From the IMG/VR virus record IMGVR_UViG_3300048672_001051, positions 124,001 to 188,000 of that record: 64,000 nucleotides of DNA; one strand, written 5' to 3'. A program made the translations under genes and the position numbers. Every line of letters starts with the position of its first letter. Positions within the stretch are counted from its first letter, which is position 1. Positions 3,620-18,407 of the stretch are shown here, in pieces. A model generated the notes under the pieces. It made no database searches and was not told where the DNA came from. It saw nothing but the letters and a program-made list of their open reading frames with translations.

Positions 3620-4729
3620 CTAAGTGCAGGTTTTTAAACAACGTAAAACTGCTTGTGGGTATAAAGTCTTGAAGTGATCTTCAAGATTAAAATTTGGATC
3701 TTGTTTAAGCTTAAATAAAAAAGCTTTGCAAGGGTAATGTTTAACAGATTCTGCAAAATCTTTAGCAGAAAGAGCTGAGTCTATGCTGTTAAAAATAGTA
3801 TAAACATCTAAATAAAATTTATCTAAAGTGCTAAGTAATGTATCTATACAAAATTTATACTCAGGACAATAAGCAAGATACTCATGATATTCACCGCTGA
3901 GACATAATTCAATAGCTCTAACTGGTGTTAAAAAGTTACCTTTCAAATGATGTACTTTTAAATATGCATCAGATTTAACTTTAAGACGTAAGTTGTTAAC
4001 ATCTCTTAAAACAAAACCTTCTTGAAGATCTGGTAATAAATTTGCTGCTAAAACAATACTATCAAAAGTTGTAAAAGAATACTTTAAAGGCCTGTGAACA
4101 TTTAAATCTAATGCTATAGTATCAAGAATATCAGTAGTTGTATCATATCCACTTATGTTATTAAAACAACCTAAAAGAAATATTTTAGGTTCTTCGTACA
4201 TATGAACAACTTTATTATCCATAGTGCACAATTCAAAACAATACGTAAATTGTTTATCAAGCTTACTGTAAAATACTGATATGTCTTGACCTGTAGTTTC
4301 AGTGAAAGTTTTAATAAACAAATCTTTAAAAGAAATTAAAGATTCTTTTTCAAACATTGCACTTAACTGTTGGACAGGTGATTCACCATTAGGTGTACCA
4401 TTAGTACCAATTTCAAAAGACTCTGTCAGTTCATTATACCAAACGCCAATAATAGAACCATCTTCTTTAGATTCAATGGTGCAGTTTTCAAATTGAAATT
4501 TAAGATCATTTTCAGGAAATTCTCCTAAATTAAAAAATCTTGGAAACATTCGGCGGACAATTTTCATATCAGACTTACGTACAACAGTGCCACGACAATT
4601 ATGAACAATGGCAGATTCTCTAGGACTTTTTAATTGGTCATAGCTTAAAAGTATATGATCACCGTAATCACGGATATTTACAGATAAATCTGTTAAAGTT
4701 TGAAGTAATGGCTGTAATAAAATATTCAT
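3620..4729 (-). CDS. T4 Rnl1-like RNA ligase
   Basis: Nucleotidyltransferase motifs SKEDGS, CFELCT, EGFVLRD, LKVKSDAY. Confidence 0.85.
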   Translation of the reverse strand: MNILLQPLLQTLTDLSVNIRDYGDHILLSYDQLKSPRESAIVHNCRGTVVRKSDMKIVRRMFPRFFNLGEFPENDLKFQFENCTIESKEDGSIIGVWYNELTESFEIGTNGTPNGESPVQQLSAMFEKESLISFKDLFIKTFTETTGQDISVFYSKLDKQFTYCFELCTMDNKVVHMYEEPKIFLLGCFNNISGYDTTTDILDTIALDLNVHRPLKYSFTTFDSIVLAANLLPDLQEGFVLRDVNNLRLKVKSDAYLKVHHLKGNFLTPVRAIELCLSGEYHEYLAYCPEYKFCIDTLLSTLDKFYLDVYTIFNSIDSALSAKDFAESVKHYPCKAFLFKLKQDPNFNLEDHFKTLYPQAVLRCLKTCT

Positions 4730-6277: not shown

Positions 6278-6730
6278 TTAAGATTGAACTTTATATTTTG
6301 AAGAGTACCGTTTCAGAATCAAATCAGCGCCTTTAATCAAAACAGACTGCATTGACTCATCTTCGCCTTTTGGCAAAGTAATCAAACGTTTGGTAAGACT
6401 AGCAGCAGTAGCTTCATCTTCAATAGGCAGCAAAGACGCATGAAGTGCATCTGCAGCAATTTTCAAACCAAGGGCACGAGAGAAGTTACACTCTTCACCA
6501 CAAATTGACAACGCCATGTGAACTTCGTCGACATCATTCAAAACACCGGCAATAGTGGCACCGCCACCAATCAGTTCTGGAATGCTAAGTTCTTTTTGAA
6601 CAGCAGGTGTGCAGAAAGTACGACGATCATCTACGTAGTTACGTAGGTGAATAGCGGCAACAACTGGCTCAACACCAGGATTTACACGACGAGCAGAAGC
6701 TTCGAGACTTTTTTGAGCAGGAGAGGTCAT
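6278..6730 (-). CDS. Hypothetical phage protein
   Basis: 150 aa; ALSICGEECNFSRALGLKIA resembles a common phage motif. Confidence 0.7.
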   Translation of the reverse strand: MTSPAQKSLEASARRVNPGVEPVVAAIHLRNYVDDRRTFCTPAVQKELSIPELIGGGATIAGVLNDVDEVHMALSICGEECNFSRALGLKIAADALHASLLPIEDEATAASLTKRLITLPKGEDESMQSVLIKGADLILKRYSSKYKVQS

Positions 6731-6732
6731 TA

Positions 6733-7074
6733 TTATTTCATACCTTTTTTAAGTTCACTTTTATGCACATTTTCAACTTTGGTTACAAATTTGATTGTTT
6801 GTGCAATGCCGTTAGCCACGTCTTTAGTGACAGTGGGGATATTACTTCGAATATAGGAAGTAACTGTGGCGTTACTTTGAAGCCAGCCGAGTTTATTTTT
6901 TGGTTTTTTACGAATGTTAGCAGAGCCAACAACAGTTAGAGCTTGAGCAGCTTTAACATCATTTGGAAACTTTTTGACATGTTTTTCAATTTTGCTACGC
7001 TTATTTTTGATAAACGAGCCGAGCTGTTGATAAACGGTGCCTTTTGACGGTTTACCACCTTTTTGGGGAGCCAT
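6733..7074 (-). CDS. Basic hypothetical protein
   Basis: 113 aa, Lys-rich, AAGGA SD upstream. Confidence 0.7.
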   Translation of the reverse strand: MAPQKGGKPSKGTVYQQLGSFIKNKRSKIEKHVKKFPNDVKAAQALTVVGSANIRKKPKNKLGWLQSNATVTSYIRSNIPTVTKDVANGIAQTIKFVTKVENVHKSELKKGMK

Positions 7075-7160
7075 GAAAATAAATCCTTAAAGATAAAAGG
7101 GAGGGGAGAGATTAGGGTCTTTAAGAAGCAGAGTAACAATCTACACTTAAAGACCCAGGA

Positions 7161-7234
7161 GGTTTCGAATGCGGGATTTGAACCCGCGATGACGCCTTGA
7201 AAGGGCATTGTTATAACCGCTTAACTAATTCGAA
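7161..7234 (-). tRNA. tRNA-Glu(TTC)
   Basis: Cloverleaf; anticodon loop CT-TTC-AA; T-loop TTCAAAT; ends CC-T. Confidence 0.9.
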
Positions 7235-7246
7235 ATAGTATTTAAT

Positions 7247-7322
7247 TGGAGCTACCTATAGGACTCGAACCTATAACAGGCTGATTACAAATCAGCTACT
7301 CTACCAATTGAGTTAAGGAAGC
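7247..7322 (-). tRNA. tRNA-Thr(TGT)
   Basis: GCTGA-TT-TGT-AA-TCAGC; CCA encoded. Confidence 0.95.
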
Positions 7323-7323
7323 T

Positions 7324-7521
7324 TTAAGTAGCATCTGAAATCTTAGAAACTTCGACTACAGAAGAACATTTTAAACATTTAATATAATAAAGAGTATAGT
7401 CAACATCCCAAACAGAACCAAGTTTTGTTTGAATATCAGTTTGAGAGTACTGTAAAAGAGTATAGCACCTCTTACACACAACTCTACTAAAAGAACCAAC
7501 CATACCAACCATACTGACCAT
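7324..7521 (-). CDS. Small Zn-ribbon protein
   Basis: CKRC and CLKC pairs. Confidence 0.55.
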   Translation of the reverse strand: MVSMVGMVGSFSRVVCKRCYTLLQYSQTDIQTKLGSVWDVDYTLYYIKCLKCSSVVEVSKISDAT

Positions 7522-7547
7522 GCTAGCTATCTCAATAATATTAAATT

Positions 7548-7624
7548 TGGTGCTACGGGCTGGAATCGAACCAGCGACACCTGGATTTTCAATCCAGTGC
7601 TACTACCAACTGAGCTACCGAAGC
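7548..7624 (-). tRNA. tRNA-Phe(GAA)
   Basis: CTGGA-TT-GAA-AA-TCCAG; CCA encoded. Confidence 0.95.
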
Positions 7625-7629
7625 AAAAT

Positions 7630-7870
7630 ATTAGCCGATGCCTAATAAAGCGATACTCAGTTCTTAACACTTGACCTCGCTCGAGGGTGCTGCTCGGATC
7701 CGCAAACAAGTTTGTTTGTTCTTTAGAGACCGTCGGACATATAAACGGTCTTTTGTGAAAGTTAACTTTCACAAATCATTGTAAGCAGATAAAAATACTT
7801 AAGCTGGTTTATTTGCCTAACATGCGAAGTAAGCCTAAGACAACAAAACTACTTACAATGATTTGTGAAA
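7630..7870. ncRNA. Candidate structured RNA or switch
   Basis: Perfect 19-bp inverted repeat 7767-7785/7852-7870, alternative partner 7752-7760, GC-rich hairpins at 7675-7703. Confidence 0.35.
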
Positions 7871-7899
7871 AAACCTAGAGTAACTATACTCTAGGTTTT
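7870..7899. terminator. Intrinsic terminator-like hairpin
   Basis: AAAACCTAGAG-8nt-CTCTAGGTTTT. Confidence 0.6.
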
Positions 7900-8269
7900 A
7901 ACAATACAACAATTACATGACACTTAGCCAAGCTGATTGTTTACCTTGACGCCTTGCATGCTTTTTACGATCACGTAAGTTACACATTCTATAAGGAAAA
8001 CAGCATCCAAATTTACAAGCAGCTTGGGGGAATATCTGAACGTTTAACGCCATAAGCTTTCAAAGTCAGACAAGCCCAAAGCTTTCAGCAATGCCGTCAC
8101 CATCAAACACACCCAGACCATAGCCAGCAGTCTTTGCATGAGCAGGTGAAGCAAGTACACTATACTGCATAAAAATACCTCTTTGTTTGTGATAATTAAA
8201 TGAGTACTAAAAGTACACGTTGTATTTGTGCAATTAAGCACAAAGCAGTTGTTTATTTCAAACAACTGC

Positions 8270-8364
8270 TGGCGGTAAGTGTGGGGTACGATCCCACAAC
8301 CCGATTCATCATCAGGCTCTAGTTTTCAGGACTAGTGCAATTATTCCATTTCTGCCAACTTACC
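8270..8364 (-). tRNA. tRNA-Ser(TGA)
   Basis: CTAGT-CC-TGA-AA-ACTAG; long variable arm; G73; T-loop ATCGTAC. Confidence 0.9.
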
Positions 8365-8368
8365 GTTG

Positions 8369-8457
8369 TGGAAAAAGAGCTAGGATTCGAACCTAGGACA
8401 GCTCACGCACGACGGAGTCAAATTCCGTTGTGTTGAACCAGACTTCACCACTCTTCT
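8369..8457 (-). tRNA. tRNA with TTG (Gln) anticodon on a class II long-variable-arm body
   Basis: ACGGA-AT-TTG-AC-TCCGT; 15-nt extra arm; 3-bp D stem; T73; CCA. Confidence 0.8.
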
Positions 8458-8460
8458 ATT

Positions 8461-8537
8461 TGGTGCGGAAAGCGGGACTCGAACCCGCAGCATCTGAAAT
8501 CTAAATCCAGCGTGTTTGCCAATTTCACCATTTCCGC
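8461..8537 (-). tRNA. tRNA-Leu(TAG) with short variable loop
   Basis: CTGGA-TT-TAG-AT-TTCAG; 5-nt variable loop ATGCT; A73; CCA. Confidence 0.9.
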
Positions 8538-8540
8538 AAA

Positions 8541-8615
8541 GGTACATCGTAATGGATTCGAACCATTGACCTACTCCTTGTAAGGGAGCCGCGCTACCAA
8601 CTGCGCTAACGATGC
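8541..8615 (-). tRNA. tRNA-Val(TAC)
   Basis: GCTCC-CT-TAC-AA-GGAGT; ends CC-T. Confidence 0.92.
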
Positions 8616-8670
8616 ATCTAACAAGAGCCTAACATAAGTATGCTCTTGTATTTTAAAAATTTATTAAAAA

Positions 8671-8765
8671 TGGTGTATGCAGTAGGAATCGAACCTACAC
8701 TGTGATCATTAATCCGGGATCGCGTTTACAGCGCGGTGCAACCAACCAATAGTTGCATTACATAC
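8671..8765 (-). tRNA. tRNA-Tyr(GTA)
   Basis: CT-GTA-AA loop; long variable arm; CCA. Confidence 0.92.
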
Positions 8766-8778
8766 ATGGAAAAAATCG

Positions 8779-9165
8779 TTATAAATAACGATTTACTAGA
8801 ATTGCATCGCAATTCGAAACATAAACATCGTGAGCATAATAACCGTTATGCTCATTATAAACAGTAATTTGAAACAAACCTTTAGTAGTTTCAATATTTA
8901 CAAAGATACAGTTGTCAGCTTGCACTTCTTTCAATTTTAAAGTTGTCAAATTTAAAGCGCTGTCTACTACAGAAACAGATAAAACTTGAGAATCAATAAA
9001 ATCATCAAAATTATCTAGAGAACTGAGGTAACCGTAAGATTCACAACATTTCCGTCCTTCCTGTATACCTACACCGATACACCCAGAAGATGTTTCAATT
9101 ACAAATCCAACATATCTTAAGTGTCCAACTACAAAAGAAGATTCTGATATACTTAAAATTTTCAC
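8779..9165 (-). CDS. Conserved phage hypothetical protein
   Basis: CCESYGY and YNEHNGYYAH motifs; TTG/GTG-type start. Confidence 0.7.
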   Translation of the reverse strand: MKILSISESSFVVGHLRYVGFVIETSSGCIGVGIQEGRKCCESYGYLSSLDNFDDFIDSQVLSVSVVDSALNLTTLKLKEVQADNCIFVNIETTKGLFQITVYNEHNGYYAHDVYVSNCDAILVNRYL

Positions 9166-9199
9166 ACAATAACCTCAATCTAAAAAATAACTACTACAA

Positions 9200-9372
9200 T
9201 GCTGGCCGCCGAAACTCTTTAGCACTTACTCTAGCCTACAAAAATGCAAACTAAACCGGGTTCAGGTTGTTTAAACCATTACAGAATAAACCCTCCAGCA
9301 ATTATACCGCAACTTGTATAACAATCTAGAACAGAACAGTGCATTAAGTATGTTGCTACGCTGCTGGATCCT
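9200..9372 (-). ncRNA. Candidate small structured RNA
   Basis: Nested pairings CCAGCA/TGCTGG, AATGCA/TGCATT, GGGTT/AACCC; shares GGATCC(G)AGCAGC with 7689-7701. Confidence 0.3.
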
Positions 9373-9374
9373 CG

Positions 9375-9752
9375 TTATTTTGAAGTAATTATTAAACCTT
9401 CTAAAGTTATAAAACCATACTGCTTAGAATGGTAGTAACCATATTGTCTAATATAATAAACTTCACGGTTAAACATATCAATAAAATAACTTTGATATTT
9501 TTTATGCTCTAAGAAATAAGGACTTTTAACAATATCTTTATAGACATTGTTTATAGACTTATTAATATTTTGGGCTAAAGATTTTTTAAATATTTTATAA
9601 AAAACATTAAGAATATTATTAGCACGCCAAGGAATTTTTTCTGAAACTTCATAATAAGTATTGTTTTCTTTGAATCTATATTTCATAGATTTAATATGAG
9701 TAGAAGACTCATTATTAAACTTTTTTATTTTATGCTGAATACTCAAAAACAC
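9375..9752 (-). CDS. Hypothetical protein
   Basis: 125-aa basic ORF. Confidence 0.6.
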   Translation of the reverse strand: MFLSIQHKIKKFNNESSTHIKSMKYRFKENNTYYEVSEKIPWRANNILNVFYKIFKKSLAQNINKSINNVYKDIVKSPYFLEHKKYQSYFIDMFNREVYYIRQYGYYHSKQYGFITLEGLIITSK

Positions 9753-10161
9753 ACCTACTTAAAAAGTAATATTTGGTCGAGTATTTTTTAAAGAAGATCT
9801 CGAAAACTCCACCCAAATCGGCTACAAGTTGGGATCCTTGTAGCCTGACGCAACTTTTACGACTAAGTCCAAGGTGTAATAGACTTATAGCTAAAATTTA
9901 AGAGTTTTTCTGAAACTAAGTTATCAGAAAAAACAACATTATTTATAACTAATTTAGCACTATCGCCAGCAATTGTAATAGTCCAATCTGTAATATTTTT
10001 TGGCAACTCAGTATTATTTCTAAAAATTTAAAGGCGGAAATTCAGGGATTTTAACCCCATTATATTGAGCAATTACTTCAATATTGTGAACTCTATGAAT
10101 AACTAAATTATACATAAGAATAATTTCTACCATTTTAAACATGCCTTTAAGTTAATTGTTT

Positions 10162-10207
10162 TGGTTGGCCGGGAGGGATTTGAACCCTCGATACCCTGAT
10201 TAAAAGT
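10162..10207 (-). pseudogene. 3' half of a canonical tRNA-Lys(TTT), positions 31-76
   Basis: A-CT-TTT-AA-TCAGG, T arm, CCGGCCA-A-CCA; 5' half missing. Confidence 0.85.
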
Positions 10208-10215
10208 GTAAATAT

Positions 10216-10289
10216 TGGTTGGCCTTGAAGGTATTGATCCTTCTTCTGGAAATTAAAAGTTTCCTGCATCACCTTAATGCTTAAAGCCA
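10216..10289 (-). tRNA. tRNA-Lys(TTT), divergent variant
   Basis: GGAAA-CT-TTT-AA-TTTCC; T-loop ATCAATA; CCA. Confidence 0.85.
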
Positions 10290-10296
10290 ATTATAC

Positions 10297-10325
10297 TTGA
10301 CAATATATTATAAACATAATATAGT
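10297..10325 (+). promoter_or_regulatory. Sigma70-type promoter for HNH gene
   Basis: TTGACA-N17-TATAGT. Confidence 0.7.
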
Positions 10326-10391
10326 AGTAGTTCAATAGTTAGTAGTAAACTACTAACTCAACTTACAATTAAAATTAAAGAGTATCATATT

Positions 10392-10904
10392 ATGAATAAA
10401 CAAATATTATTAGATTTTATTAAACAAAATAAATCTTCTAGACAAATTGCAGAAGAACTTCAAGTATCACAAACAACTATTAGATATTGGCTTAAAAAAT
10501 ATAATTTAAAAACTAAAATATACACACAAATTATAGATAATAAAAAAGTTTGTACTAAATGCAATATTAATAAAGAAATTTCAGAATATTATTTTAAAAA
10601 TAAAAAACATAAAAATATGCACTCGGAATGTAAACTGTGTTTTAATTCTAGAATTACCGAGCAGTTTAGAGATTTAAAAACACAGTGTATAGAATACAAA
10701 GGATCTAAATGTCAAATTTGCGATTATAATAAATATCAAGGAGCTTTAGAATTTCATCATTTAGATCCAAATGAAAAAGATTTTGCTATTTCAGCAGCAA
10801 CTTCAAGGTTGTTAAATGAAACAATGAAAAAAGAATTAGATAAATGTATATTAGTTTGTTCGAATTGCCATAAAGAAATTCACGCTAAACTAGTTGATAT
10901 TTAA
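10392..10904 (+). CDS. Freestanding HNH homing endonuclease with N-terminal HTH
   Basis: RQIAEELQVSQTTIRYWL HTH; CQIC...LEFHHLDP...CSNCHKEIH. Confidence 0.88.
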   Translation: MNKQILLDFIKQNKSSRQIAEELQVSQTTIRYWLKKYNLKTKIYTQIIDNKKVCTKCNINKEISEYYFKNKKHKNMHSECKLCFNSRITEQFRDLKTQCIEYKGSKCQICDYNKYQGALEFHHLDPNEKDFAISAATSRLLNETMKKELDKCILVCSNCHKEIHAKLVDI

Positions 10905-10929
10905 ATTTTCTACCACTGAAATATACTCC
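10905..10929 (-). pseudogene. 5' tRNA fragment (acceptor strand plus D arm)
   Basis: TGGAGTA-TA-TTTC-AGTGGTA-GAAA; perfect D stem; partner 3' half unclear. Confidence 0.5.
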
Positions 10930-10979
10930 AAAATTGCTTATTTTAAAAAATAACCACTAATCTACCGACCAATTGTGTG

Positions 10980-11165
10980 TTAAGTATTTTTTAATAACCA
11001 ATCAGCACGAACTCCTGTGAGAATATTACACTGGCTGTTATACTCACCCTCTATTTCAGCTAATTTTGTCTTAAGAATTCTATTTTCTTGAGCTAGCTGC
11101 ATATTTGCACGTCTTAAAATTTGTAATTCTTCAGTAAGCTTTAAATATTTTACACTTTCTTGCAT
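10980..11165 (-). CDS. Small coiled-coil protein
   Basis: 61 aa with heptad pattern. Confidence 0.55.
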   Translation of the reverse strand: MQESVKYLKLTEELQILRRANMQLAQENRILKTKLAEIEGEYNSQCNILTGVRADWLLKNT

Positions 11166-11293
11166 AATAAACCTTTAATACAGTTAAAAAATAAGGGTCT
11201 TTTGTTTATGAGAATAGACTGTAGTATTAAACTACAGTGAAATCAAAACATTCTGAAGACTTAAAAGTCTTACACAGGGGCGACCTACTCCTG

Positions 11294-11527
11294 TCACTTT
11301 GCCTTACGGCTACGATAATACTTTTTAAAAACACTGTAAGGAATCCGATAACTATTCAAAAACTTATTTAAATAATGCGCAGAAATTTCAGGATGATCTA
11401 TGACAAATTGATGTATATTACACAAGTATTCAAGAAGTTCTGCTCTTTCCATTTGATGTCCAGGTTCTATTGGACAATGGTACGAAGGGCCTTGTAAGTG
11501 ACGTTCCATACGATCTTTATCAAACAT
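11294..11527 (-). CDS. Hypothetical protein
   Basis: 77 aa, AAGG SD. Confidence 0.6.
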   Translation of the reverse strand: MFDKDRMERHLQGPSYHCPIEPGHQMERAELLEYLCNIHQFVIDHPEISAHYLNKFLNSYRIPYSVFKKYYRSRKAK

Positions 11528-11741
11528 AATAAACCTTAATTTTTAAAATAATACTTAGAATTTAGTTGAGGAGGTTTTACTACATACTGTTGAGTTTTAT
11601 CACACCAGATAAAAGAAGATTTTCTTTTATACAAAGTAGGTATAAGTATATTTTCATTTGGTATGTTAATAACTGCATGTATATAACTAGCATATAATTT
11701 TTTAAATAAGCTCATTTTAACTCAATCTTAAAATATATAAA

Positions 11742-11815
11742 GGCGCATTTAATGGGAATCGAACCCACATAAGACTCCTAGACAGGGAGTTACCTTACCA
11801 ATCGGCCTCAAATGC
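11742..11815 (-). tRNA. tRNA-Asp(GTC)
   Basis: ACTCC-CT-GTC-TA-GGAGT (unusual pyrimidine at 37); G73. Confidence 0.88.
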
Positions 11816-11867
11816 GTAAAAAACCAACACGTATAAGTCATAAACCTATGCTGATGTTGGTAAACAG

Positions 11868-11896
11868 TTGCATTGCTAATTACTTTGTAATATACT
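11868..11896 (+). promoter_or_regulatory. Sigma70-type promoter for HNH gene
   Basis: TTGCAT-N17-TATACT. Confidence 0.6.
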
Positions 11897-11970
11897 TGCG
11901 CTACACAAGTTCGAGTTGTTATTAAATAATCGAACAAACATTAAAATTAATAAATTACAGAGTTATAAAC

Positions 11971-12567
11971 ATGCTAAAAGAAACATCTTTAAAAGAGAAA
12001 ATAATTGATTTAAGAAATCAAAATTTAAGTTACAGAGAAATTTCTGAAAAACTTAACTGTACAAAAAGTGTAATATGCTATCACCTTACAGAAAAAGAAA
12101 AACAGAGAGTTGCAGATTCGACTAAAAAATTTAAAGAAAATAACCCTTTAAGTACAAAATTAACTCAATTTACAAGAGAGCAAGCAAAAGGACTTAATAA
12201 TAAAGCTCTTAAATTCTCTCAAGATAGAGAGATTAGAAAAGGCTTAAAATTACATAAAGATGGTGAAAATTATATAAATTATAAAAATCTTTATGAAGAG
12301 TTAATAAAAAAGCCTTATTGTTATTTAACTGGTGAAAGTGTTGATTTAACAAAGTCAGCAGATTATCAACTAGATCATATTATACCTATTTCAAAAAATG
12401 GTAGTTCTACTCTAGATAATATGGGGTTAACAACTAAAGCAGCTAATAAAGCTAAAAGCGATCTAACTTTAGAAGAGTTTTTTGATTTATGCGCAAGTGT
12501 TATTGTTCATAATAATTTAATGCCTTTAGTGGAGGCAAAACTTGCCAATAAAATATTAGCAAAATAA
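11971..12567 (+). CDS. Freestanding HNH homing endonuclease with N-terminal HTH
   Basis: LSYREISEKL HTH; CYLTG...LDHIIPISKNG...NMGLTTKAANKAK. Confidence 0.88.
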   Translation: MLKETSLKEKIIDLRNQNLSYREISEKLNCTKSVICYHLTEKEKQRVADSTKKFKENNPLSTKLTQFTREQAKGLNNKALKFSQDREIRKGLKLHKDGENYINYKNLYEELIKKPYCYLTGESVDLTKSADYQLDHIIPISKNGSSTLDNMGLTTKAANKAKSDLTLEEFFDLCASVIVHNNLMPLVEAKLANKILAK

Positions 12568-12568
12568 G

Positions 12569-12647
12569 TGGCTGCCCATCTAGGTAACGATCCTAGCTAT
12601 TCATTGTTTAACAGACAAGTCCGTGCACCATGCTCGGATTATGGGCA
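12569..12647 (-). tRNA. tRNA-Asn(GTT)
   Basis: TTGT-CT-GTT-AA-ACAA; T-loop ATCGTTA; CCA. Confidence 0.88.
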
Positions 12648-12716
12648 AAAATTTGAAGTTATGTTTTAAATGCACATAACTTCAACTACAACAAGAAAAT
12701 ATAAAGTTAAAAAATT

Positions 12717-12968
12717 TTATATAAAAAATTCACACCAGCTACTTCCAAACTTATCACTATTATTCTCTTCAGCTAATTTTTTAAATTCTTTAGCTGTGTA
12801 AGGTGTGTTAACAATAATAGATTCAAATGCTTGAGTATGTTTAAACTTAGACCAAGTTAAACTAGCACAAGACCCGCATAAATTATAAACTTGTCTAATT
12901 TGTTTACTAATTACTGGAACGTTGAAAGATACTTCTACTTCACCATTATGACAATTTACGCAACCCAT
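12717..12968 (-). CDS. Small Zn-finger protein
   Basis: CVNC and CGSC pairs. Confidence 0.6.
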   Translation of the reverse strand: MGCVNCHNGEVEVSFNVPVISKQIRQVYNLCGSCASLTWSKFKHTQAFESIIVNTPYTAKEFKKLAEENNSDKFGSSWCEFFI

Positions 12969-12971
12969 TTT

Positions 12972-13073
12972 TTAAAACTCTAAATAAATTTTAATTTGTT
13001 GTCTTGCACAAGCTTCACAACAACCATCAGGTACAGTAGCACCTGTTAAAGAATTCCAAATTACTTTTAACAT
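12972..13073 (-). CDS. Possible 33-aa peptide (track ORF trimmed to exclude tRNA)
   Basis: MLKVIWNSLTGATVPDGCCEACARQQ. Confidence 0.35.
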   Translation of the reverse strand: MLKVIWNSLTGATVPDGCCEACARQQIKIYLEF

Positions 13074-13117
13074 GCTTATCCTGCATTTTTTTAACACGTT
13101 ATAAAAACAGTGTATAA

Positions 13118-13206
13118 TGGTCCGGCCGGTGGGACTTGAACCCACAATGTGCTGTAGCACGCTCGATTATGAGTCGAGTCCATTTAACCAATTCTGGCAC
13201 AGCCGG
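13118..13206 (-). tRNA. tRNA(CAT), Ile2-like anticodon arm on a class II long-variable-arm body
   Basis: CTCGA-CT-CAT-AA-TCGAG; extra arm GTGCT-ACA-GCAC; 3-bp D stem; A73; CCA. Confidence 0.85.
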
Positions 13207-13240
13207 ATAAATTTAAAATATAAATAAAAAGGAAATAAAT

Positions 13241-13999
13241 ATGACTACATTACCAAAATATTACATTACAACTCAACATGAAATTGACAACATGAAATCA
13301 AATTCTTTAATTTTTATTAATTGTGAGTATTGCAATACAGAGTTTTCACTGCAAAAGAAGTATTTAACATTACAGCTTAAAAATCAAAACACTTACAGAA
13401 CAACATGCAGTGGAAGTTGTTTTATAAAGCTTAAATCAATAGACTCTAAAGTAATTACAAATTGTAAAACATGCGATAAAGAAATTACTAAAACAAAAAA
13501 AGAAATAGAAGGATCTAAGTCAGGTTTTGTTTTTTGCTCTAGTTCTTGTGCAGCTAAAACAAATAATATCACAAGTAAATTAAAATACTCAATTAAAAAT
13601 TGTTTAAACTGTCTTGTAGATTATAAACCTACAAGATGTAGAGATAGTGGAACATGTTCTCAATTTTGTTTAATGGAGTATGGCATGAAATCAAGAAAAT
13701 TATCAGACGTAGTTAAAAGAACTCATTCAAATAAATACGACGGCGTTAGAAGTAATGCAAGGCTTTACGCTAAATACCACTATTTACCAAAATGTGCACT
13801 ATGTAATTATGATAAACATTTTGAAGTTTGTCATATAAAAGCTTTAACTAATTTTAATAATAATGATTCATTATTTGAAATTAACAATAAAACTAATTTA
13901 ATCCATTTATGTCCAAATTGTCATTGGGAGTTTGATCACAATTTAATACAGCTTGAAACTATAGTTAAAGCACAAGTAGAAAGTTTGCTAGTCTTGTAG
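13241..13999 (+). CDS. Freestanding HNH homing endonuclease with Zn-finger repeats
   Basis: Multiple CxxC; CALC...EVCHIK...LCPNCHWEFDH. Confidence 0.88.
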   Translation: MTTLPKYYITTQHEIDNMKSNSLIFINCEYCNTEFSLQKKYLTLQLKNQNTYRTTCSGSCFIKLKSIDSKVITNCKTCDKEITKTKKEIEGSKSGFVFCSSSCAAKTNNITSKLKYSIKNCLNCLVDYKPTRCRDSGTCSQFCLMEYGMKSRKLSDVVKRTHSNKYDGVRSNARLYAKYHYLPKCALCNYDKHFEVCHIKALTNFNNNDSLFEINNKTNLIHLCPNCHWEFDHNLIQLETIVKAQVESLLVL

Positions 14000-14213
14000 A
14001 CTAGCTATGCTACAGTTGCTAAATAAAAAACGCGTACTCCCAGAATGAATACGACTAGTTGTTTAAAAATATATTTTTAAAGGATAATAACTCAGCGCTG
14101 TCTTCACACGCATAAAAAACCTAGAAGCTTTATATTCCTTCCTGTCAACACTTTCTAGTTTTATAGTCTAAAAGTGCGAAAACGACAAAAGCCTTTCTGA
14201 AGGGCTTAATTTG

Positions 14214-14642
14214 TTATTTAACCAATTCATAAATATGATAACAATAAACTTTTTCAATAAAAGGTTCATCATAAATATATTCATACTGAGGGTCTAAATT
14301 TCCAATATACTCACCCCATTTATGCCAACGCCAACCACCTTCTGCGGGTTGATCAGCTTTAACAACTGGAGTTAATGTAATCACAAATGAACGATCAGTA
14401 GAATCTACCAGTTCAGGGCATTGCTCTAGGATTTGTTCACAATTATCACAAACGCCATAAGGGCCAATATCCAAAGTTGGATATCGTTCAAAATCAGATA
14501 AAATATGGGTACCACCAAAAGAATTAATCTGGTAGATTCCAGGAATAATTTCTACAGATGGAGGTAAGTTGTGGAACTCAGTTAACATCTTTAACACTGG
14601 ATCAGCTGGATCTGCCAATAAAGAAGGCATTGGAATTAACAT
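14214..14642 (-). CDS. Conserved phage hypothetical protein
   Basis: YGVCDN and GGWRWHKWGEYIG motifs. Confidence 0.75.
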   Translation of the reverse strand: MLIPMPSLLADPADPVLKMLTEFHNLPPSVEIIPGIYQINSFGGTHILSDFERYPTLDIGPYGVCDNCEQILEQCPELVDSTDRSFVITLTPVVKADQPAEGGWRWHKWGEYIGNLDPQYEYIYDEPFIEKVYCYHIYELVK

Positions 14643-14667
14643 AATATATTTACCTATTTAAAAAGTT

Positions 14668-14741
14668 TGGAGCGGTGTGGCAGATTCGAACTGCCAACTA
14701 TTGGTTGGAAGCCAAGGTGCTGACCGTTACACTACAGTCCC
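14668..14741 (-). pseudogene. tRNA-Gly(TCC) with non-pairing (chimeric) acceptor stem
   Basis: D, anticodon (CT-TCC-AA) and T arms normal; 5' GGGACTG pairs with 3' ACACCGC at only 2 of 7 positions. Confidence 0.75.
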
Positions 14742-14760
14742 CATCACATTACAACAAAAA

Positions 14761-14847
14761 GGCAGAGTGCAGTGGACTCGAACCACAACCGTAAAAACAA
14801 TCACGTTGCTTAGCAGGCAAGTCTTAACCCAGTTAAGTTTACACTCT
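14761..14847 (-). tRNA. tRNA-Ser(GCT)
   Basis: TTGC-CT-GCT-AA-GCAA; long arm; G73. Confidence 0.88.
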
Positions 14848-15007
14848 ATTTAATTGACAATTATATGCTTCTTTTGCCGTTTAGACATGCTGTACATATC
14901 TTTAGCATTAAGAACATCTTTATATGTTGCTTTAAGAGCTTTAGATAATAACTCAGAAAACTCTTTTAAGTCAATAACTTTTTTCATATTTTTAACAATA
15001 ATAAAAA

Positions 15008-15082
15008 TGGTAGTTCTATCAAGACTTGAACTTGAGTCAAACGATTATCAATCGTCCGTTTTACCGACTAAACTACAGAACT
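15008..15082 (-). tRNA. tRNA-Ile(GAT)
   Basis: ACGA-TT-GAT-AA-TCGT; CCA. Confidence 0.92.
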
Positions 15083-15087
15083 AGTAA

Positions 15088-15117
15088 TGGTCTACTGTTG
15101 TATTAAACAGTAGACCA
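15088..15117 (-). terminator. Terminator-like hairpin after vWA gene
   Basis: TGGTCTACTGT-8nt-ACAGTAGACCA. Confidence 0.6.
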
Positions 15118-15124
15118 TAAAGAA

Positions 15125-15979
15125 TTAACGATTGCAGTAAGCTTGATAATCTTTAATCCAATTTGGAAATTCAGTTAGAAGTTTATCATACAGCTGCTCG
15201 TCAGTAATTGAAGACAAAGAGTCTACTTCAAAGAAGTTGCAGTTGTCAACAGCACGACCTGACATTGTATCAAGATGCTCAAGAATGCCGTAATTGCTGC
15301 CACCCAAACCTACAAACTGCCAGAAAATATTTTCTGTAGAAGCCTGACGGATTAGTTTAGTAATTTCAGCGTCTTTATAGACGCCACCATCACTGATGAA
15401 AATAACGTAGGTTGGTAAACCATTAGTTTCATTTTTATGGTTGGCAATAACTTCATGAATAACTTTTGGCTCATCATTTGAAAAACCAATACCTACGCCA
15501 CTGCCAGCACGGCTCAAGCTTACATTCTTAACGTAGTCTGCGATTGTAGTTAAAGTAATGCTAGGCATTTGGCGAGTCTTACAAGCGAACGCATGACACT
15601 CTAAAATGCCGTCAGGATCGAAATGAGTGGCTAGTGGTACTACACGGTCAAGAACACCCTGAACAGCGCCTGAGCCGTATTGTGAGGTCATAGAGCCAGA
15701 CGCATCAAGAACAATAACAACATTTGCTTTAACTGTAGTTAAGTTATTTTTAACCAAACTAATTGCAGCCGTTTTTGCAAAATTCAGCAAGCTTGGATTT
15801 TGAGTTTCGTACTTTTTAACAAAGTCTAATGTGCTGCTAGGGCGTTCGCCAGCGGCAAACATTTCAAGAGGAGATTTTGAAGGTTGCGGCTTAACAGCTG
15901 GAGTTGGACTTACAGGGGCAGGTGGTTCTGCTACAACAGCAGCAGGTTTACTACCAAAGAGATTTGAAAAAAAGCTCAT
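15125..15979 (-). CDS. vWA domain protein (vWA-TerF-like, Ter stress system)
   Basis: MIDAS VLDASGSM; FISDGG; FWQFVGLG; LEHLDTMSGRAVDNCNFF. Confidence 0.88.
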   Translation of the reverse strand: MSFFSNLFGSKPAAVVAEPPAPVSPTPAVKPQPSKSPLEMFAAGERPSSTLDFVKKYETQNPSLLNFAKTAAISLVKNNLTTVKANVVIVLDASGSMTSQYGSGAVQGVLDRVVPLATHFDPDGILECHAFACKTRQMPSITLTTIADYVKNVSLSRAGSGVGIGFSNDEPKVIHEVIANHKNETNGLPTYVIFISDGGVYKDAEITKLIRQASTENIFWQFVGLGGSNYGILEHLDTMSGRAVDNCNFFEVDSLSSITDEQLYDKLLTEFPNWIKDYQAYCNR

Positions 15980-16189
15980 AGATTACTCGTAAAAAATCTG
16001 AAGAATATTCTTCATTAGAAATAAAGGCTGATGTTTGTATCAAACATCACTAGGGAGTTACTGCAACTGAAGGGCAGAGTGGCTGATGATTTAGGAATAA
16101 TTCACTAACATTGTATGTAGTAACTGATACAACAACTGTAATAATCACCCAAAACCATTGACGGCTTGTAAGTACAACCATAATACATC

Positions 16190-16480
16190 CTAAAGTTTAT
16201 TGACAAATCTGGATGATTTTAAGTCAACTGGAGATACATCATTTATCAAATACTGATAGAGTTCGTCAGTAAGTTTGATTGTTCTCAAATAAATTTGAAA
16301 AGCGTAGTCAACATTTTCATGCTTATAATGAAAATAACTAACTTCTAAATCAATACTAACATCATACAGAAAATGATGATCACCACCATGAAAATTCTCT
16401 ACAGCATTTTCAAATGCTTCAATAATTTTTTTAGAAGAACTATCATTAAATAAGTCTTTCATTATAAAACGTTTAATCAT
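16190..16480 (-). CDS. Hypothetical protein
   Basis: 96-aa ORF in operon. Confidence 0.6.
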   Translation of the reverse strand: MIKRFIMKDLFNDSSSKKIIEAFENAVENFHGGDHHFLYDVSIDLEVSYFHYKHENVDYAFQIYLRTIKLTDELYQYLINDVSPVDLKSSRFVNKL

Positions 16481-16488
16481 ATTAAGTC

Positions 16489-16767
16489 TTAATCTTTTTT
16501 CCGAAATTGCCAGCCAGAAGTATGTGCATAATACATAACTGTTTTTAAGTCTGAACTTACATAAACTTTACGGCTACTTTTTAAAGTCTGATAAAAAACT
16601 TTAAAAAGTTCTTGTTGCTTGTTAAGTTCTACAGTAGTCAAAGCGGTTGAGAGTCTGTTAAACAGGGGATGTTGTATAACATTAAGTTGCTTAGCTAGCG
16701 CTAAAGCATCTGATAAACAGCCATTAATTAAAAGAAACTCAATAACAGAATCATTAAGCTTATTCAT
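16489..16767 (-). CDS. Hypothetical protein
   Basis: 92-aa ORF in operon. Confidence 0.6.
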   Translation of the reverse strand: MNKLNDSVIEFLLINGCLSDALALAKQLNVIQHPLFNRLSTALTTVELNKQQELFKVFYQTLKSSRKVYVSSDLKTVMYYAHTSGWQFRKKD

Positions 16768-16787
16768 AATAAAATCTCTCGAATATG

Positions 16788-16900
16788 TGGCAGTAGACCA
16801 AGGACTTGAACCTAAAAGATATTTATTTTAAATATCTCACAGCACCATTTTAAATAACAGTAACTAGTATGTTAAATAAACTTGACCTGTGGGGTCTACC
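16788..16900 (-). ncRNA. Atypical tRNA-like element
   Basis: Acceptor GGTAGAC/GTCTACT, G73, CCA, T-loop TTCAAGT, AT-rich hairpin arm; no recognisable D or anticodon arm. Confidence 0.5.
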
Positions 16901-16906
16901 ATAATT

Positions 16907-17416
16907 TCAGCTTAAAATTTTTAACAAATCTGGAACTGCACTAGTCATACAATAAAACTGATTGACTTGGACTTGTAGAGTTTGACGCATAAAATGCGAA
17001 AAATTATCTAATCCTTTTTGTCGATCGTCAGTAATTAGATGAACTCTTGCAAATTTTAATTGATTAACAACATCAAAAACAATATTTGCTGGAAAAATAA
17101 ATTCTTTTACATTAAAAGGATCTAATGTAAAGGAATAAGTTCTTAAATTAATGTTAATATTTAATTTATTAACAGTAATAAATTCAAACCAGACTAAAAT
17201 CTCCGGTGTTAGAACAACTTTATCATTTATAGTATTTGCTTTAAAAAAAAGACCATTGACAGCTAATACATTATTTAAAAACTCTAATCGCTGTGTAGCA
17301 GAAAATGTGGCTATAAGCCACAAATGAGGCTCAAGATTTCTTTTTTGACTATTTAAAAAACTTAAAAGCGTAGGAAAGCTTGAGCCGTGAAAACTTTCAA
17401 AAAAATGATTATTCAT
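16907..17416 (-). CDS. Hypothetical protein
   Basis: 169-aa ORF. Confidence 0.65.
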   Translation of the reverse strand: MNNHFFESFHGSSFPTLLSFLNSQKRNLEPHLWLIATFSATQRLEFLNNVLAVNGLFFKANTINDKVVLTPEILVWFEFITVNKLNININLRTYSFTLDPFNVKEFIFPANIVFDVVNQLKFARVHLITDDRQKGLDNFSHFMRQTLQVQVNQFYCMTSAVPDLLKILS

Positions 17417-17475
17417 TTTTAAAGCAACCTATAATATGGGAGTACTCTCGAGATTTGGACTAGTTCTAAAAAACT

Positions 17476-18165: not shown

Positions 18166-18186
18166 TTTTAAATTAACCTGGAATAT

Positions 18187-18244
18187 TGGTCGGCGCAGTC
18201 GGAATCGAACCGACGGTGTACCATTACGATGTACGCGATTCGAA
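18187..18244 (-). pseudogene. 3' half (33-76) of a class II-bodied tRNA with TCG (Arg) anticodon
   Basis: T-TCG-AA-TCGC, long arm, GTCGG-TTCGATT-CCGAC, TGCGCCG-A-CCA. Confidence 0.8.
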
Positions 18245-18253
18245 CTAAGAATT

Positions 18254-18280
18254 TGGTATCACGAACGGGATTCGAAACTG
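18254..18280 (-). pseudogene. Degenerate tRNA 3' end fragment
   Basis: TTCGAAT T-loop plus acceptor strand and ACCA. Confidence 0.55.
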
Positions 18281-18288
18281 TACTATAT

Positions 18289-18339
18289 TGGTGTGGGTAG
18301 GGAGAGTCGAACTCCCAAGGCCGAAACCTGTCAGATTTT
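18289..18339 (-). pseudogene. 3' half (35-76) of a tRNA-Leu-like gene
   Basis: AA-AA-TCTGA, AGGT-TTCG-GCCT arm, T arm, TACCCAC-A-CCA. Confidence 0.75.
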
Positions 18340-18378
18340 CTTACCACTATAGTGTAGGTTTTGGTATACAGTATAAAC

Positions 18379-18407
18379 TTGTAATTTATGTGTATAGCTG
18401 TTATAAT
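18379..18407 (+). promoter_or_regulatory. Sigma70-type promoter reading antisense through tRNA-Leu into the endonuclease gene
   Basis: TTGTAA-N17-TATAAT with extended -10 TGn. Confidence 0.65.

What the first reader, a model, noticed from the sequence alone, without database searches (positions are those of the whole stretch)
10162..10929. Canonical tRNA-Lys replaced by a divergent tRNA-Lys linked to an HNH gene
Seen: the 3' half of a textbook tRNA-Lys(TTT) (stem strand TCAGG) is cut at position 31 and lies 8 nt downstream of a full tRNA-Lys(TTT) with a different anticodon stem (GGAAA/TTTCC) and T-loop ATCAATA. Beyond it are a TTGACA-N17-TATAGT promoter, an HNH gene and a D-arm-containing 5' fragment. 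This is the same layout as the Leu/Arg locus. Established: tRNA-Lys(UUU) is the target of PrrC and PARIS, and T5 uses a variant tRNA-Lys to escape PARIS. Inference: homing may be spreading nuclease-resistant tRNA alleles. Caveat: the 5' fragment pairs with the 3' half at only 3 of 7 positions.
Basis: partly seen in the sequence, partly recalled or inferred. Interest (0 to 1): 0.65.

Follow-up and report, generated by a model that had tools for sequence, protein, structure and literature searches.

The report
Homing-nuclease cassette splitting a phage tRNA-Lys gene
In this uncultured freshwater phage, a selfish HNH nuclease gene that carries its own unusual but intact tRNA-Lys sits inside an ordinary tRNA-Lys gene, now broken in two, and related nuclease genes split other phage tRNA genes in the same way.

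Summary
The true 5' partner of the canonical tRNA-Lys 3' half is at 10951-10971. A canonical tRNA-Lys(UUU) gene is therefore split, with 9 nt lost, by a 743-bp insert.

The insert holds a 5' piece of another tRNA, an AT-rich antisense HNH gene with a near-consensus promoter, and an intact non-canonical tRNA-Lys.

The nearest HNH relatives (53-70% aa) lie between matching tRNA 5' and 3' pieces in five independent metagenomic contexts. One 657-bp cassette is 98% identical in two otherwise unrelated contigs. [quoted passage not shown]

- The closest HNH (70%) is linked to a canonical tRNA-Lys.
- The divergent tRNA-Lys occurs without the HNH in a syntenic relative, and belongs to a large phage tRNA class found in at least 119 viral contigs.
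- The broken canonical gene keeps the exact PARIS/AriB site UAAUCA, while the intact one reads UAAUUU. Nuclease resistance is plausible but untested.

Verdict: a new variant of a known kind, of moderate interest.

The parts
10951..10971 (-). 5' piece (positions 1-21: acceptor strand TGGTCGG, U8 A9, D-stem strand GATT, D-loop AGTGGTTA) of the canonical tRNA-Lys gene. It begins 9 nt after the stop of the upstream 61-aa ORF.
   Evidence: Sequence. Pairs 7/7 with the 3' half. Motif frequency against shuffles.
10931..10950 (-). 20-nt AT-rich spacer carried in with the cassette. It is homologous to the sequence upstream of the tRNA 5' piece in L131.
   Evidence: Alignment of the window with L131.
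10906..10930 (-). 5' piece (positions 1-26, TGGAGTA-TA-TTTC-AGTGGTA-GAAA-A) of a different tRNA ('Z'), ending 2 nt from the HNH stop codon. It is a relic of the cassette's former insertion site.
   Evidence: 3/7 pairing with the Lys 3' half. Homologous fragment in the same place in L131/L132, where its own 3' partner is present. tRNA D-arm matches.
10392..10904 (+). HNH homing-type endonuclease gene, P0001 (170 aa): N-terminal helix-turn-helix, CxxC...CxxC zinc ribbon, HNH core CQIC...EFHHLDP...CSNCHKEIH. It is antisense to the tRNA operon. GC is 0.228 against 0.347 for the genome.
   Evidence: PHROG 2255, E = 2e-33. Pfam HTH hits only. Alignment with homologues. Composition in the lowest 0.6% of windows. 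Single copy in the genome.
10297..10325 (+). Sigma-70-like promoter TTGACA-N17-TATAGT for the HNH gene. The -35 element is conserved in L131 at the same distance from the linked tRNA.
10307..10335 (-). Promoter-like TTGAAC-N17-TATAAT that overlaps the HNH promoter back to back and would start transcription just upstream of the intact tRNA-Lys. TTGAAC is conserved in L131.
   Evidence: consensus match only.
10216..10289 (-). Intact non-canonical tRNA-Lys(UUU), called Lys' here: A8 A9, D-arm GCAU-UAAGGUG-AUGC, anticodon stem GGAAA/UUUCC, T arm GAAGG-AUCAAUA-CCUUC, encoded CCA. It is the only tRNA-Lys in the genome.
   Evidence: Orthologue in L129 with three compensatory stem changes. Class-wide covariation.
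10208..10215 (-). 8-nt spacer ATATTTAC between the CCA of Lys' and the canonical 3' half. L131 also has 8 nt between its linked tRNA-Lys and the next tRNA fragment.
10162..10207 (-). 3' part (positions 31-76 with CCA) of the canonical tRNA-Lys(UUU) gene. It carries the sequence U36-AAUCA41.
   Evidence: (84% identity to the intact tRNA-Lys of L131, 20 nt identical).

Best explanation
The interval 10162-10971 is the scar left when a free-standing HNH homing-endonuclease cassette invaded a phage tRNA-Lys gene.

The window comes from a 229.7-kb AT-rich phage genome assembled from a freshwater metagenome. Its tRNA genes lie in a minus-strand cluster that is full of selfish endonuclease genes.

Inferred order of events: a canonical tRNA-Lys(UUU) gene lying just after a 61-aa ORF was broken in its D-arm/anticodon-arm region and lost positions 22-30. 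It now brackets a 743-bp insert. The insert consists of:
- a 20-nt spacer plus a 26-position 5' piece of another tRNA, dragged along from the cassette's previous insertion site;
- the HNH gene, antisense to the tRNA operon and driven by its own near-consensus promoter;
- a complete tRNA-Lys(UUU) of a widespread non-canonical phage class, with its own promoter-like site.

Inferred mechanism, by analogy with T4 SegB and the T5 HNH enzymes:
- During co-infection the HNH enzyme cuts or nicks tRNA-gene DNA in genomes that lack it.
- Repair copies the cassette into the break.
- The conserved D- and T-arm sequences shared by all tRNA genes act as short homology arms, so the element can hop between different tRNA genes. 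The outermost acceptor strands remain those of the recipient gene.
- Insertion destroys the target, which makes the carrier immune.
- The linked intact tRNA-Lys keeps lysine decoding supplied.

What is shown:
- the anatomy of the locus;
- the intact HNH motifs;
- the foreign base composition;
- the presence/absence difference against a close relative;
- the recurrent bracketing of this HNH clade by matching tRNA halves;
- a 98%-identical cassette in two unrelated contexts.

What is inferred:
- cleavage specificity;
- the order of events;
- whether the non-canonical tRNA-Lys arrived with the cassette, or later replaced the 5' half of a canonical tRNA-Lys that the cassette carried, as in L131.
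For: Anatomy and pairing.

HNH identity and integrity.

Foreign composition: all four plus-strand endonuclease-type ORFs in the cluster have GC 0.23-0.27 against 0.347 for the genome.

Presence/absence against a relative: the syntenic relative L129 (76-94% nt) lacks the HNH and the canonical fragments, but has the Lys' orthologue.

Nearest homologues, all antisense to their neighbours:
- L131/L132 (70% aa): tRNA 5' piece | HNH | promoter | intact canonical tRNA-Lys | 8 nt | matching 3' piece.
- L133, L134/L135, L136 and L137 (53-62% aa): HNH between 5' and 3' tRNA pieces whose acceptor strands pair 7/7 in every case. The chance of this per case is about 0.001.
- L133 and L135 share only 657 nt, at 98% identity, and that stretch is the split tRNA plus the HNH.

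More distant family members sit between tRNA genes in Yersinia, Klebsiella, Vibrio (T5-like) and FelixO1 phages and in IMG/VR contigs.

Precedents:
- SegB recognises tRNA T-arm DNA and homes within tRNA clusters (PMC2330249).
- SegB association with tRNA genes and its anti-defence role (PMC13096335).
- T5 heg genes overlapping tRNA genes and a tRNA pseudogene.

The Leu locus in the same window repeats the layout, and L129 preserves the uninvaded, intron-bearing tRNA-Leu gene.
Against: - No genome with the uninterrupted canonical tRNA-Lys at this exact site was found. The flanking 125-aa ORF has no relatives, and tRNA patterns found nothing. The insertion is therefore inferred from the scar, not from an empty allele.
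- The left junction is not a clean homology junction, because two 5' fragments lie in tandem.
- No cleavage data exist for any member of this HNH clade.
- Pfam's HNH models do not reach threshold on P0001.
- The promoter calls are consensus matches in AT-rich DNA.
- The source run's contigs did not let me verify the assembly junctions.
Confidence: 0.72

Rival explanations
1. The HNH cassette is a vehicle that spreads a nuclease-resistant tRNA-Lys allele. The non-canonical tRNA-Lys escapes a host anticodon nuclease (PARIS/AriB-, PrrC- or RloC-like) that cleaves the canonical one. This benefit drives retention and spread of the cassette.
For: - The canonical remnant has exactly the AriB site UAAUC|A, and its 5' piece has U16. 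The intact tRNA reads UAAUUU with A16.
- None of the 64 tRNA-Lys(UUU) members of the non-canonical class has UAAUCA.
- Both cassette copies that carry a tRNA (the window and L131) carry tRNA-Lys(UUU).
- The phage invests in RNA repair: Rnl1, Ro/TROVE and a HAD 'Swiss army knife' domain.
- A homing endonuclease has been shown to help phages beat a tRNA-cleaving defence (PMC13096335).
Against: - The closest HNH is linked to a canonical tRNA-Lys with UAAUCA.
- Lys' occurs without the HNH in the nearest relative and in most of at least 119 other viral contigs.
- U39, whose change alone abolishes AriB cleavage, is unchanged.
- The host and its defences are unknown.
- The phage's own tRNA-Thr(UGU) keeps UAAUCA.
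- The divergence could equally reflect immunity to DNA-level homing endonucleases, since Lys' lacks the GGTTCRANTCC and canonical D-arm DNA motifs.
Confidence: 0.2
2. The tRNA pieces are debris of ordinary illegitimate recombination and decay in a crowded tRNA cluster. The HNH gene is merely a neighbour and played no causal role.
For: The cluster holds other tRNA debris and odd tRNAs that are not directly next to endonuclease genes (14679-14847, 16800, 18190-18290). Gene order differs greatly from the relative L129.
Against: - Matching tRNA halves bracket this HNH clade in five of five independent contexts, with the 5' piece ending at the HNH stop.
- A near-identical cassette lies in unrelated contexts.
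- The spacer and inner 5' piece are shared with L131.
- Among 125 class members examined, the configuration 'Lys' followed by a tRNA 3' half' occurs only here.
Confidence: 0.06
3. The split canonical tRNA-Lys is still functional. The insert would be an intron, or the halves would be joined in trans.
For: Group I introns do occur in tRNA genes of this phage group: the relative L129 has one in tRNA-Leu(UAA).
Against: - Nine nucleotides are absent (the D-stem 3' strand, position 26 and most of the anticodon-stem 5' strand).
- No intron family hit anywhere in 6500-25500, even at E <= 10.
- The ORF is antisense.
- The insert contains a complete tRNA and promoters.
Confidence: 0.02

Closest known systems
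T4 SegB (GIY-YIG free-standing homing endonuclease in the T4 tRNA cluster)
   Same: - Selfish endonuclease gene embedded in a phage tRNA cluster.
- Targets tRNA-gene DNA through conserved tRNA sequence (GGTTCRANTCC).
- Causes replacement or loss of the recipient's tRNA genes.
- Statistically associated with tRNA genes across phages, and able to help evade tRNA-cleaving defences (PMC2330249; PMC13096335).
   Different: - P0001 is an HNH enzyme with an HTH and a zinc ribbon, not a GIY-YIG enzyme.
- It lies antisense, inside a split tRNA gene, rather than between genes.
- It carries a whole tRNA as cargo.
- No biochemistry is available.
T5 HNH endonucleases F-TflI/II/IV (hegA, hegC, hegD) and the FelixO1 tRNA-cluster HNH genes
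   Same: - HNH homing-type genes interspersed with tRNA genes.
- T5 heg ORFs overlap tRNA genes, and hegD overlaps a tRNA-Gln pseudogene.
- FelixO1 ORF45 is a homologue of P0001 (40% over 77% of the query).
- P0001 shows weak similarity to hegA (E = 3e-4).
   Different: - T5 and FelixO1 genes are co-oriented with the tRNAs and mostly intergenic.
- The clade nearest P0001 is antisense and bracketed by the two halves of one tRNA gene.
- From memory, the T5 enzymes were reported to cut within tRNA genes of relatives (Akulenko et al. 2004). That paper is not in the library and I did not read it.
T5 tRNA-Lys(UUU) variant that neutralises PARIS (AriB)
   Same: A phage-encoded tRNA-Lys(UUU) that differs from the sensitive form at positions around the AriB cut (40/41) and in the D-loop (position 16).
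   Different: - T5 tRNA-Lys has a canonical D-arm and T-loop, and changes U39 (UAAACC).
- Lys' keeps U39, changes C40 and A41, and belongs to a structurally distinct class (A8/U14, altered 54:58).
- Resistance has not been tested.
Homing-endonuclease insertions that split a host gene without an intron or intein (for example mobE splitting nrdA in Aeromonas phage Aeh1; recalled from memory, Friedrich et al. 2007)
   Same: A free-standing endonuclease gene sits inside a gene and leaves two pieces.
   Different: In Aeh1 the two protein pieces reassemble and stay functional. Here the split tRNA is dead, and function is supplied by a separate, complete tRNA gene in the insert.

Membership tests
Free-standing HNH homing endonuclease | Intact HNH (beta-beta-alpha-metal) catalytic core | tested here: met
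   PHROG 2255, E = 2e-33. CxxC, EFHH, N and CxxCHxxxH are conserved against 7 homologues. Pfam's HNH models did not reach threshold; only HTH models hit.
Free-standing HNH homing endonuclease | Sporadic presence among close relatives, and foreign base composition | tested here: met
   Absent from the syntenic relative L129. GC 0.228, in the lowest 0.6% of genome windows. A sister cassette is 98% identical in unrelated contexts.
Free-standing HNH homing endonuclease | Sits in or next to a disrupted or variant copy of its target site | tested here: met
   Bracketed by complementary tRNA halves in the window and in 5 of 5 contexts of its nearest homologues.
Free-standing HNH homing endonuclease | Site-specific cleavage of the endonuclease-free allele, and biased inheritance in mixed infection | not testable with these tools
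   The phage is uncultured and no biochemistry exists. No empty-site allele was found.
Intron-encoded endonuclease / group I intron in a tRNA gene | Self-splicing ribozyme core flanking the ORF, with exons that join into a complete tRNA | tested here: not met
   No Intron_gpI hit in 6500-25500 at E <= 10. Nine tRNA positions are missing and the ORF is antisense.
SegB-like GIY-YIG endonucleases | GIY-YIG catalytic domain | tested here: not met
   Only HTH (Pfam) and HNH (PHROG) matches.
Functional tRNA-Lys (the intact gene, 10216-10289) | Cloverleaf with UUU anticodon, supported by covariation | tested here: met
   Rfam 47.9 bits and ARAGORN. The minimum-energy fold is a cloverleaf. The L129 orthologue has 3 compensatory pair changes and no disruptive ones. 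In the class, 101 of 105 unique sequences keep at least 15 of 17 stem pairs across 64 different acceptor strands.
Anti-defence (nuclease-resistant) phage tRNA, T5 tRNA-Lys type | Substitutions at the nuclease's recognition or cleavage positions | tested here: inconclusive
   C40U, A41U and U16A differ from the AriB-sensitive pattern, but U39 is retained. The host and its nucleases are unknown.
Anti-defence (nuclease-resistant) phage tRNA, T5 tRNA-Lys type | Resists cleavage and rescues infection under the defence system | not testable with these tools
   Needs in vitro cleavage and infection assays.

The most novel reading that the evidence does not exclude
A clade of antisense HNH cassettes homes promiscuously into many different tRNA genes, using the universally conserved D- and T-arm DNA as homology arms. 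Some copies have acquired a complete spare tRNA-Lys(UUU) as cargo. This makes invasion of a tRNA-Lys gene harmless, and may deliver a tRNA design (A8:U14, altered T-loop, changed 40/41) that is blind both to tRNA-gene-cutting homing endonucleases and to host anticodon nucleases. It would be a third way, besides introns and inteins, for a selfish nuclease to sit inside a useful gene.
Probability: 0.3. Interest if true: 0.75.

Novelty: new variant of a known kind. Interest (0 to 1): 0.55.

Why it matters
Phage tRNA genes have recently been recognised as counter-defence tools against tRNA-cleaving immunity, including PARIS, Septu and retrons. Homing endonucleases in tRNA clusters have just been shown to reshape those genes.

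This locus, together with its relatives, gives a clear natural example of an HNH element that breaks a tRNA gene and brings a replacement.
- It suggests how such elements move between unlike tRNA genes.
- It points to a large, mostly unannotated class of non-canonical phage tRNA-Lys genes, about a third of which ARAGORN misses in isolated ~90-nt excerpts at default settings (40 of 121).

If the cargo tRNA is nuclease-resistant, selfish DNA and anti-defence would be directly coupled. If it is not, the locus is still a useful model for how tRNA repertoires of large phages turn over.

Tried and rejected
Searches for an uninvaded allele or for close relatives that found nothing useful:
- megablast and blastn against 50,697 phage records;
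- IMG/VR by the flanking 125-aa ORF;
- exact tRNA patterns for the canonical 3' half, the 5' piece and the Lys' 5' part;
- a protein word search with the 125-aa ORF, which found only itself;
- a metagenome scan with the Lys' 5' part, which gave one unrelated tRNA-rich contig, L130.

Other dead ends:
- The sequencing-run search found only the probable source run. Laying its contigs showed only fragments of other HNH genes, with no joints, so it neither confirms nor refutes the assembly.
- The isotype of the two 5' fragments could not be assigned by similarity to 1,557 phage tRNAs, because D-arms are too generic.

Ideas considered and rejected:
- The insert is an intron.
- Lys' genes commonly displace the 5' halves of neighbouring tRNAs: 0 further cases among 125.
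- T5 tRNA-Lys belongs to the Lys' class.
- The four endonuclease ORFs of the window are paralogues.
- tRNA-Lys is the immediate neighbour of this HNH family more often than chance: about 3 of 13 unbiased contexts, which is not significant.

Not used: the big representative-protein search, structure prediction and complex prediction, because the family scans left no open question about the protein.
Full report
**Setting.** The window is bases 124001-188000 of a single 229,656-bp contig with 34.7% GC. The contig was assembled from a freshwater metagenome.
- It is a large phage. It encodes T4-type RNA ligase 1, a Ro/TROVE protein, tyrosyl-tRNA synthetase, NAMPT, a Pif1 helicase with an intein, and a TerF-like vWA protein.
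- Its nearest named relative is Acinetobacter phage ME3, at only about 31% amino-acid identity.
- Fifteen to sixteen tRNA genes lie on the minus strand between 7161 and 24900.
- Four ORFs in this cluster run the other way: 10392-10904, 11971-12567, 13241-13999 and 18527-19285.
- Three of the four are HNH endonucleases of different families. All four are markedly AT-rich, with GC 0.23-0.27.

**Check of the observation.** The list below reads the minus strand 5' to 3'.
- 10971-10951 is TGGTCGG-TA-GATT-AGTGGTTA, which is positions 1-21 of a tRNA.
- 10950-10931 is a 20-nt AT-rich spacer.
- 10930-10906 is TGGAGTA-TA-TTTC-AGTGGTA-GAAA-A, positions 1-26 of another tRNA.
- 10904-10392 is the HNH ORF in antisense.
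- 10325-10297 is its TTGACA-N17-TATAGT promoter, the best match in 4.9 kb.
- 10289-10216 is a complete tRNA-Lys(UUU), followed by 8 nt.
- 10207-10162 is positions 31-76 of a canonical tRNA-Lys(UUU).

The fragment 20 nt further upstream pairs 7 of 7, and it matches a pattern that occurs 0.21 times per 64 kb by chance. A canonical tRNA-Lys gene is therefore split by a 743-bp insert, with positions 22-30 lost. No intron model matches the region.

**The HNH protein.** P0001 has an N-terminal helix-turn-helix, a zinc ribbon and a complete HNH core.
- Its family is very large: 2,078 proteins at E <= 1e-15.
- In named phages its members sit inside tRNA clusters: Yersinia fHe-Yen9-04, Klebsiella Muenster, Vibrio VCPH and FelixO1.
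- It is weakly similar to T5 hegA.
- T5's tRNA region contains three HNH genes that overlap tRNA genes, one of them a pseudogene.

**Nearest homologues.** I fetched the contexts of the closest homologues. In every case the HNH gene is antisense to its neighbours, as it is here. It also lies between a tRNA 5' piece, which ends near the HNH stop codon, and a tRNA 3' piece, which follows the HNH promoter. The acceptor strands of the two pieces pair 7 of 7 in each case:

| Locus | Protein | aa identity | 5' acceptor / 3' acceptor |
|---|---|---|---|
| L131/L132 | P0123 | 70% | GGGAGTA / TGCTCCC |
| L133 | P0125 | 62% | GGAAGTA / TGCTTCC |
| L134/L135 | P0125 | 62% | GCGATCG / TGGTCGC |
| L136 | P0126 | 55% | AGGGTTG / CAGCCCT |
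| L137 | P0127 | 53% | GCCCGTT / AACGGGT |

- L133 and L135 share nothing except 657 nt at 98% identity. That stretch is exactly the split tRNA plus the HNH, and their acceptor strands differ.
- I read this as a mobile cassette that recombines into different tRNA genes through the conserved D- and T-arm sequences. The outermost ends remain those of the recipient gene.
- More distant homologues (48-52%) are co-oriented with the tRNAs and lie between tRNA genes.

**Comparison with L131.** L131/L132 is the key comparison. Its order on the tRNA-sense strand is as follows:
- ORF stop;
- a spacer homologous to the window's 20-nt spacer;
- a 5' piece homologous to the window's inner fragment;
- the HNH in antisense (75% nt identity over 586 nt, promoter region included);
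- the -35 element;
- an intact canonical tRNA-Lys(UUU);
- 8 nt;
- the matching 3' piece of the split tRNA.

That tRNA-Lys has the same anticodon-stem strand, variable loop and T-loop as the window's broken gene (20 nt identical, 84% over 49 nt). Relative to L131, the window has the non-canonical tRNA-Lys plus 8 nt in place of positions 1-30 of the canonical tRNA-Lys. The difference begins within about 7 nt of the conserved -35 element.

Two histories fit these data.
- **History one.** An L131-like cassette with a canonical tRNA-Lys as cargo invaded the resident canonical tRNA-Lys, using the cargo as its one homology arm. This left positions 1-21 upstream. Later, the non-canonical gene replaced the 5' half of the cargo.
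- **History two.** The donor cassette already carried the non-canonical tRNA-Lys, and it was captured in a break in the resident gene.

I cannot decide between them. In both, the inner 5' fragment is a relic of an earlier insertion site, and the HNH is the agent.

**The non-canonical tRNA-Lys.** It folds as a clean cloverleaf.
- A syntenic relative, L129 (76-94% nt identity across the region), was found through the TerF-like protein.
- L129 has an orthologue with the same acceptor stem and D-arm, and three fully compensatory changes in the anticodon and T stems.
- In L129 that tRNA is not next to this HNH, and there are no canonical tRNA-Lys fragments.
- Its D-arm signature AAGCWTTAAGGTGAWGCA (A8, A9, U14) occurs in at least 119 IMG/VR contigs; the scan was truncated at that number.
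- Of 105 unique sequences, 101 keep at least 15 of 17 stem pairs across 64 different acceptor strands.
- The anticodons are UUU (64), CUU (23), GUG (12) and two others.
- T-loop positions 54:58 are G:G, A:T, T:A or A:A.
- It is therefore a genuine, widespread phage tRNA type, not a one-off. Only about 5 of 119 loci have a P0001 homologue within 1 kb.
- T5's tRNA-Lys is not of this type.

- AriB of PARIS cuts E. coli tRNA-Lys at U36-AAUC|A41. U39>A abolishes cleavage, and A41>C and U16>C reduce it (bioRxiv 10.1101/2025.02.04.636281).
- The broken canonical gene reads UAAUCA, and its 5' piece has U16.
- The intact gene reads UAAUUU with A16. Its L129 orthologue reads UAAUCU.
- Resistance is therefore conceivable.
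- Against this, U39 is kept, the host is unknown, and the closest HNH travels with a UAAUCA tRNA-Lys.
- The non-canonical gene also lacks the conserved DNA motifs that tRNA-gene-cutting endonucleases use. SegB, for example, needs GGTTCRANTCC. Immunity to homing enzymes is therefore an equally good reason for its survival.
- That homing endonucleases associate with tRNA genes and can aid escape from tRNA-cleaving defences was published in 2026 for SegB (PMC13096335).

**The Leu locus.** The same layout recurs.
- It consists of a plus-strand 252-aa ORF, an intact intronless tRNA-Leu(UAA) (18412-18497) and, about 70 nt downstream, the 3' exon of a different tRNA-Leu(UAA) (18288-18341).
- The ORF has no family match. 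By eye it has two LAGLIDADG-like motifs, which is an inference.
- L129 still has that second gene whole, with a group I intron in the anticodon loop (Rfam Intron_gpI, 45.1 bits, E = 3e-10).
- This is an independent before-and-after pair. It supports replacement of a resident tRNA gene by an endonuclease-plus-tRNA unit.

**Verdict.**
- The best explanation is a nested scar of HNH homing into a tRNA-Lys gene, with a complete tRNA-Lys as cargo (confidence about 0.7).
- The nuclease-resistance idea remains a minority possibility that simple assays could test.
- In kind, this is a new variant of the known endonuclease-in-tRNA-cluster theme.

**Limits.**
- No empty-site allele was found.
- No biochemistry exists for this clade.
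- The assembly could not be checked with reads.
- Short DNA patterns were typed for searches.

Noticed in passing
window 10216-10289; L005 1994-2067; L009-L127: The intact tRNA-Lys belongs to a large phage tRNA class with D-arm AAGCWTTAAGGTGAWGCA (A8, A9, U14) and a non-standard T-loop 54:58 pair. It occurs in at least 119 IMG/VR contigs. Most members are Lys(UUU/CUU) and some are His(GUG). ARAGORN made no call on 40 of 121 isolated ~90-nt excerpts, and the copy in Xanthomonas phage X1 is unannotated.
   Followed up: partly
window 12569-12647 (-): A non-canonical tRNA-Asn(GUU)-like gene (AA at positions 8-9, T-loop ATCGTTA, UAAACA after the anticodon) abuts the 3' end of the antisense HNH_4 ORF 11971-12567. 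ARAGORN at default settings and Rfam both miss it.
   Followed up: partly
window 18254-19285; L129 14218-14535: The Leu locus repeats the layout: an antisense 252-aa ORF of no known family (LAGLIDADG-like motifs by eye), an intact intronless tRNA-Leu(UAA), and the 3' exon remnant of another tRNA-Leu(UAA). The relative L129 keeps that other gene whole, with a group I intron in the anticodon loop.
   Followed up: partly
window 18190-18290, 14679-14847, 16800-16814, 10033-10060 (all -): Further tRNA debris and odd tRNAs: several 3' ends with CCA downstream of the Leu locus; a tRNA-Gly(UCC)-like gene with a broken acceptor stem; a tRNA-Ser(GCU)-like gene; and unassigned T-arm-like pieces.
   Followed up: no
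window 25125-25272 (-): A tRNA-like RNA lies directly downstream of the Ro/TROVE gene (25273-26736). It has an acceptor-like stem, a canonical D-arm and T-arm, and a large insert where the anticodon arm should be; its fold has z = -3.3. It is conserved in L129. It resembles the YrlA-type Y RNAs that accompany bacterial Ro (recalled from memory), but there is no Rfam hit.
   Followed up: partly
window 21292-23829 (-): The Pif1-type helicase carries a LAGLIDADG intein (about 21571-22780). The L129 orthologue is 444 aa and lacks it. This is another presence/absence difference in a selfish element between the two relatives.
   Followed up: partly
window 3620-4729, 20181-21258, 25273-26736, 39270-40481, 32621-34096: An RNA-repair and translation toolkit surrounds the tRNA cluster: T4-type RNA ligase 1, a HAD 'Swiss army knife' RNA-repair domain, a nucleotidyltransferase, Ro/TROVE, tyrosyl-tRNA synthetase and NAMPT.
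   Followed up: no
window 13118-13206 and 8369-8457 (-): tRNA-Met(CAU) and tRNA-Gln(UUG) are 89 nt long with long variable arms, which is unusual for these isotypes.
   Followed up: no
L133 2890-3545 vs L135 2416-3072; L071 8851-9381: An identical HNH protein (P0125) lies in a 657-bp cassette that is 98% identical between otherwise unrelated contigs. In L071, an AT-rich homologue (42% aa) sits in a roughly 50% GC phage and overlaps the 5' end of tRNA-Arg. Both are signs of recent horizontal movement.
   Followed up: partly
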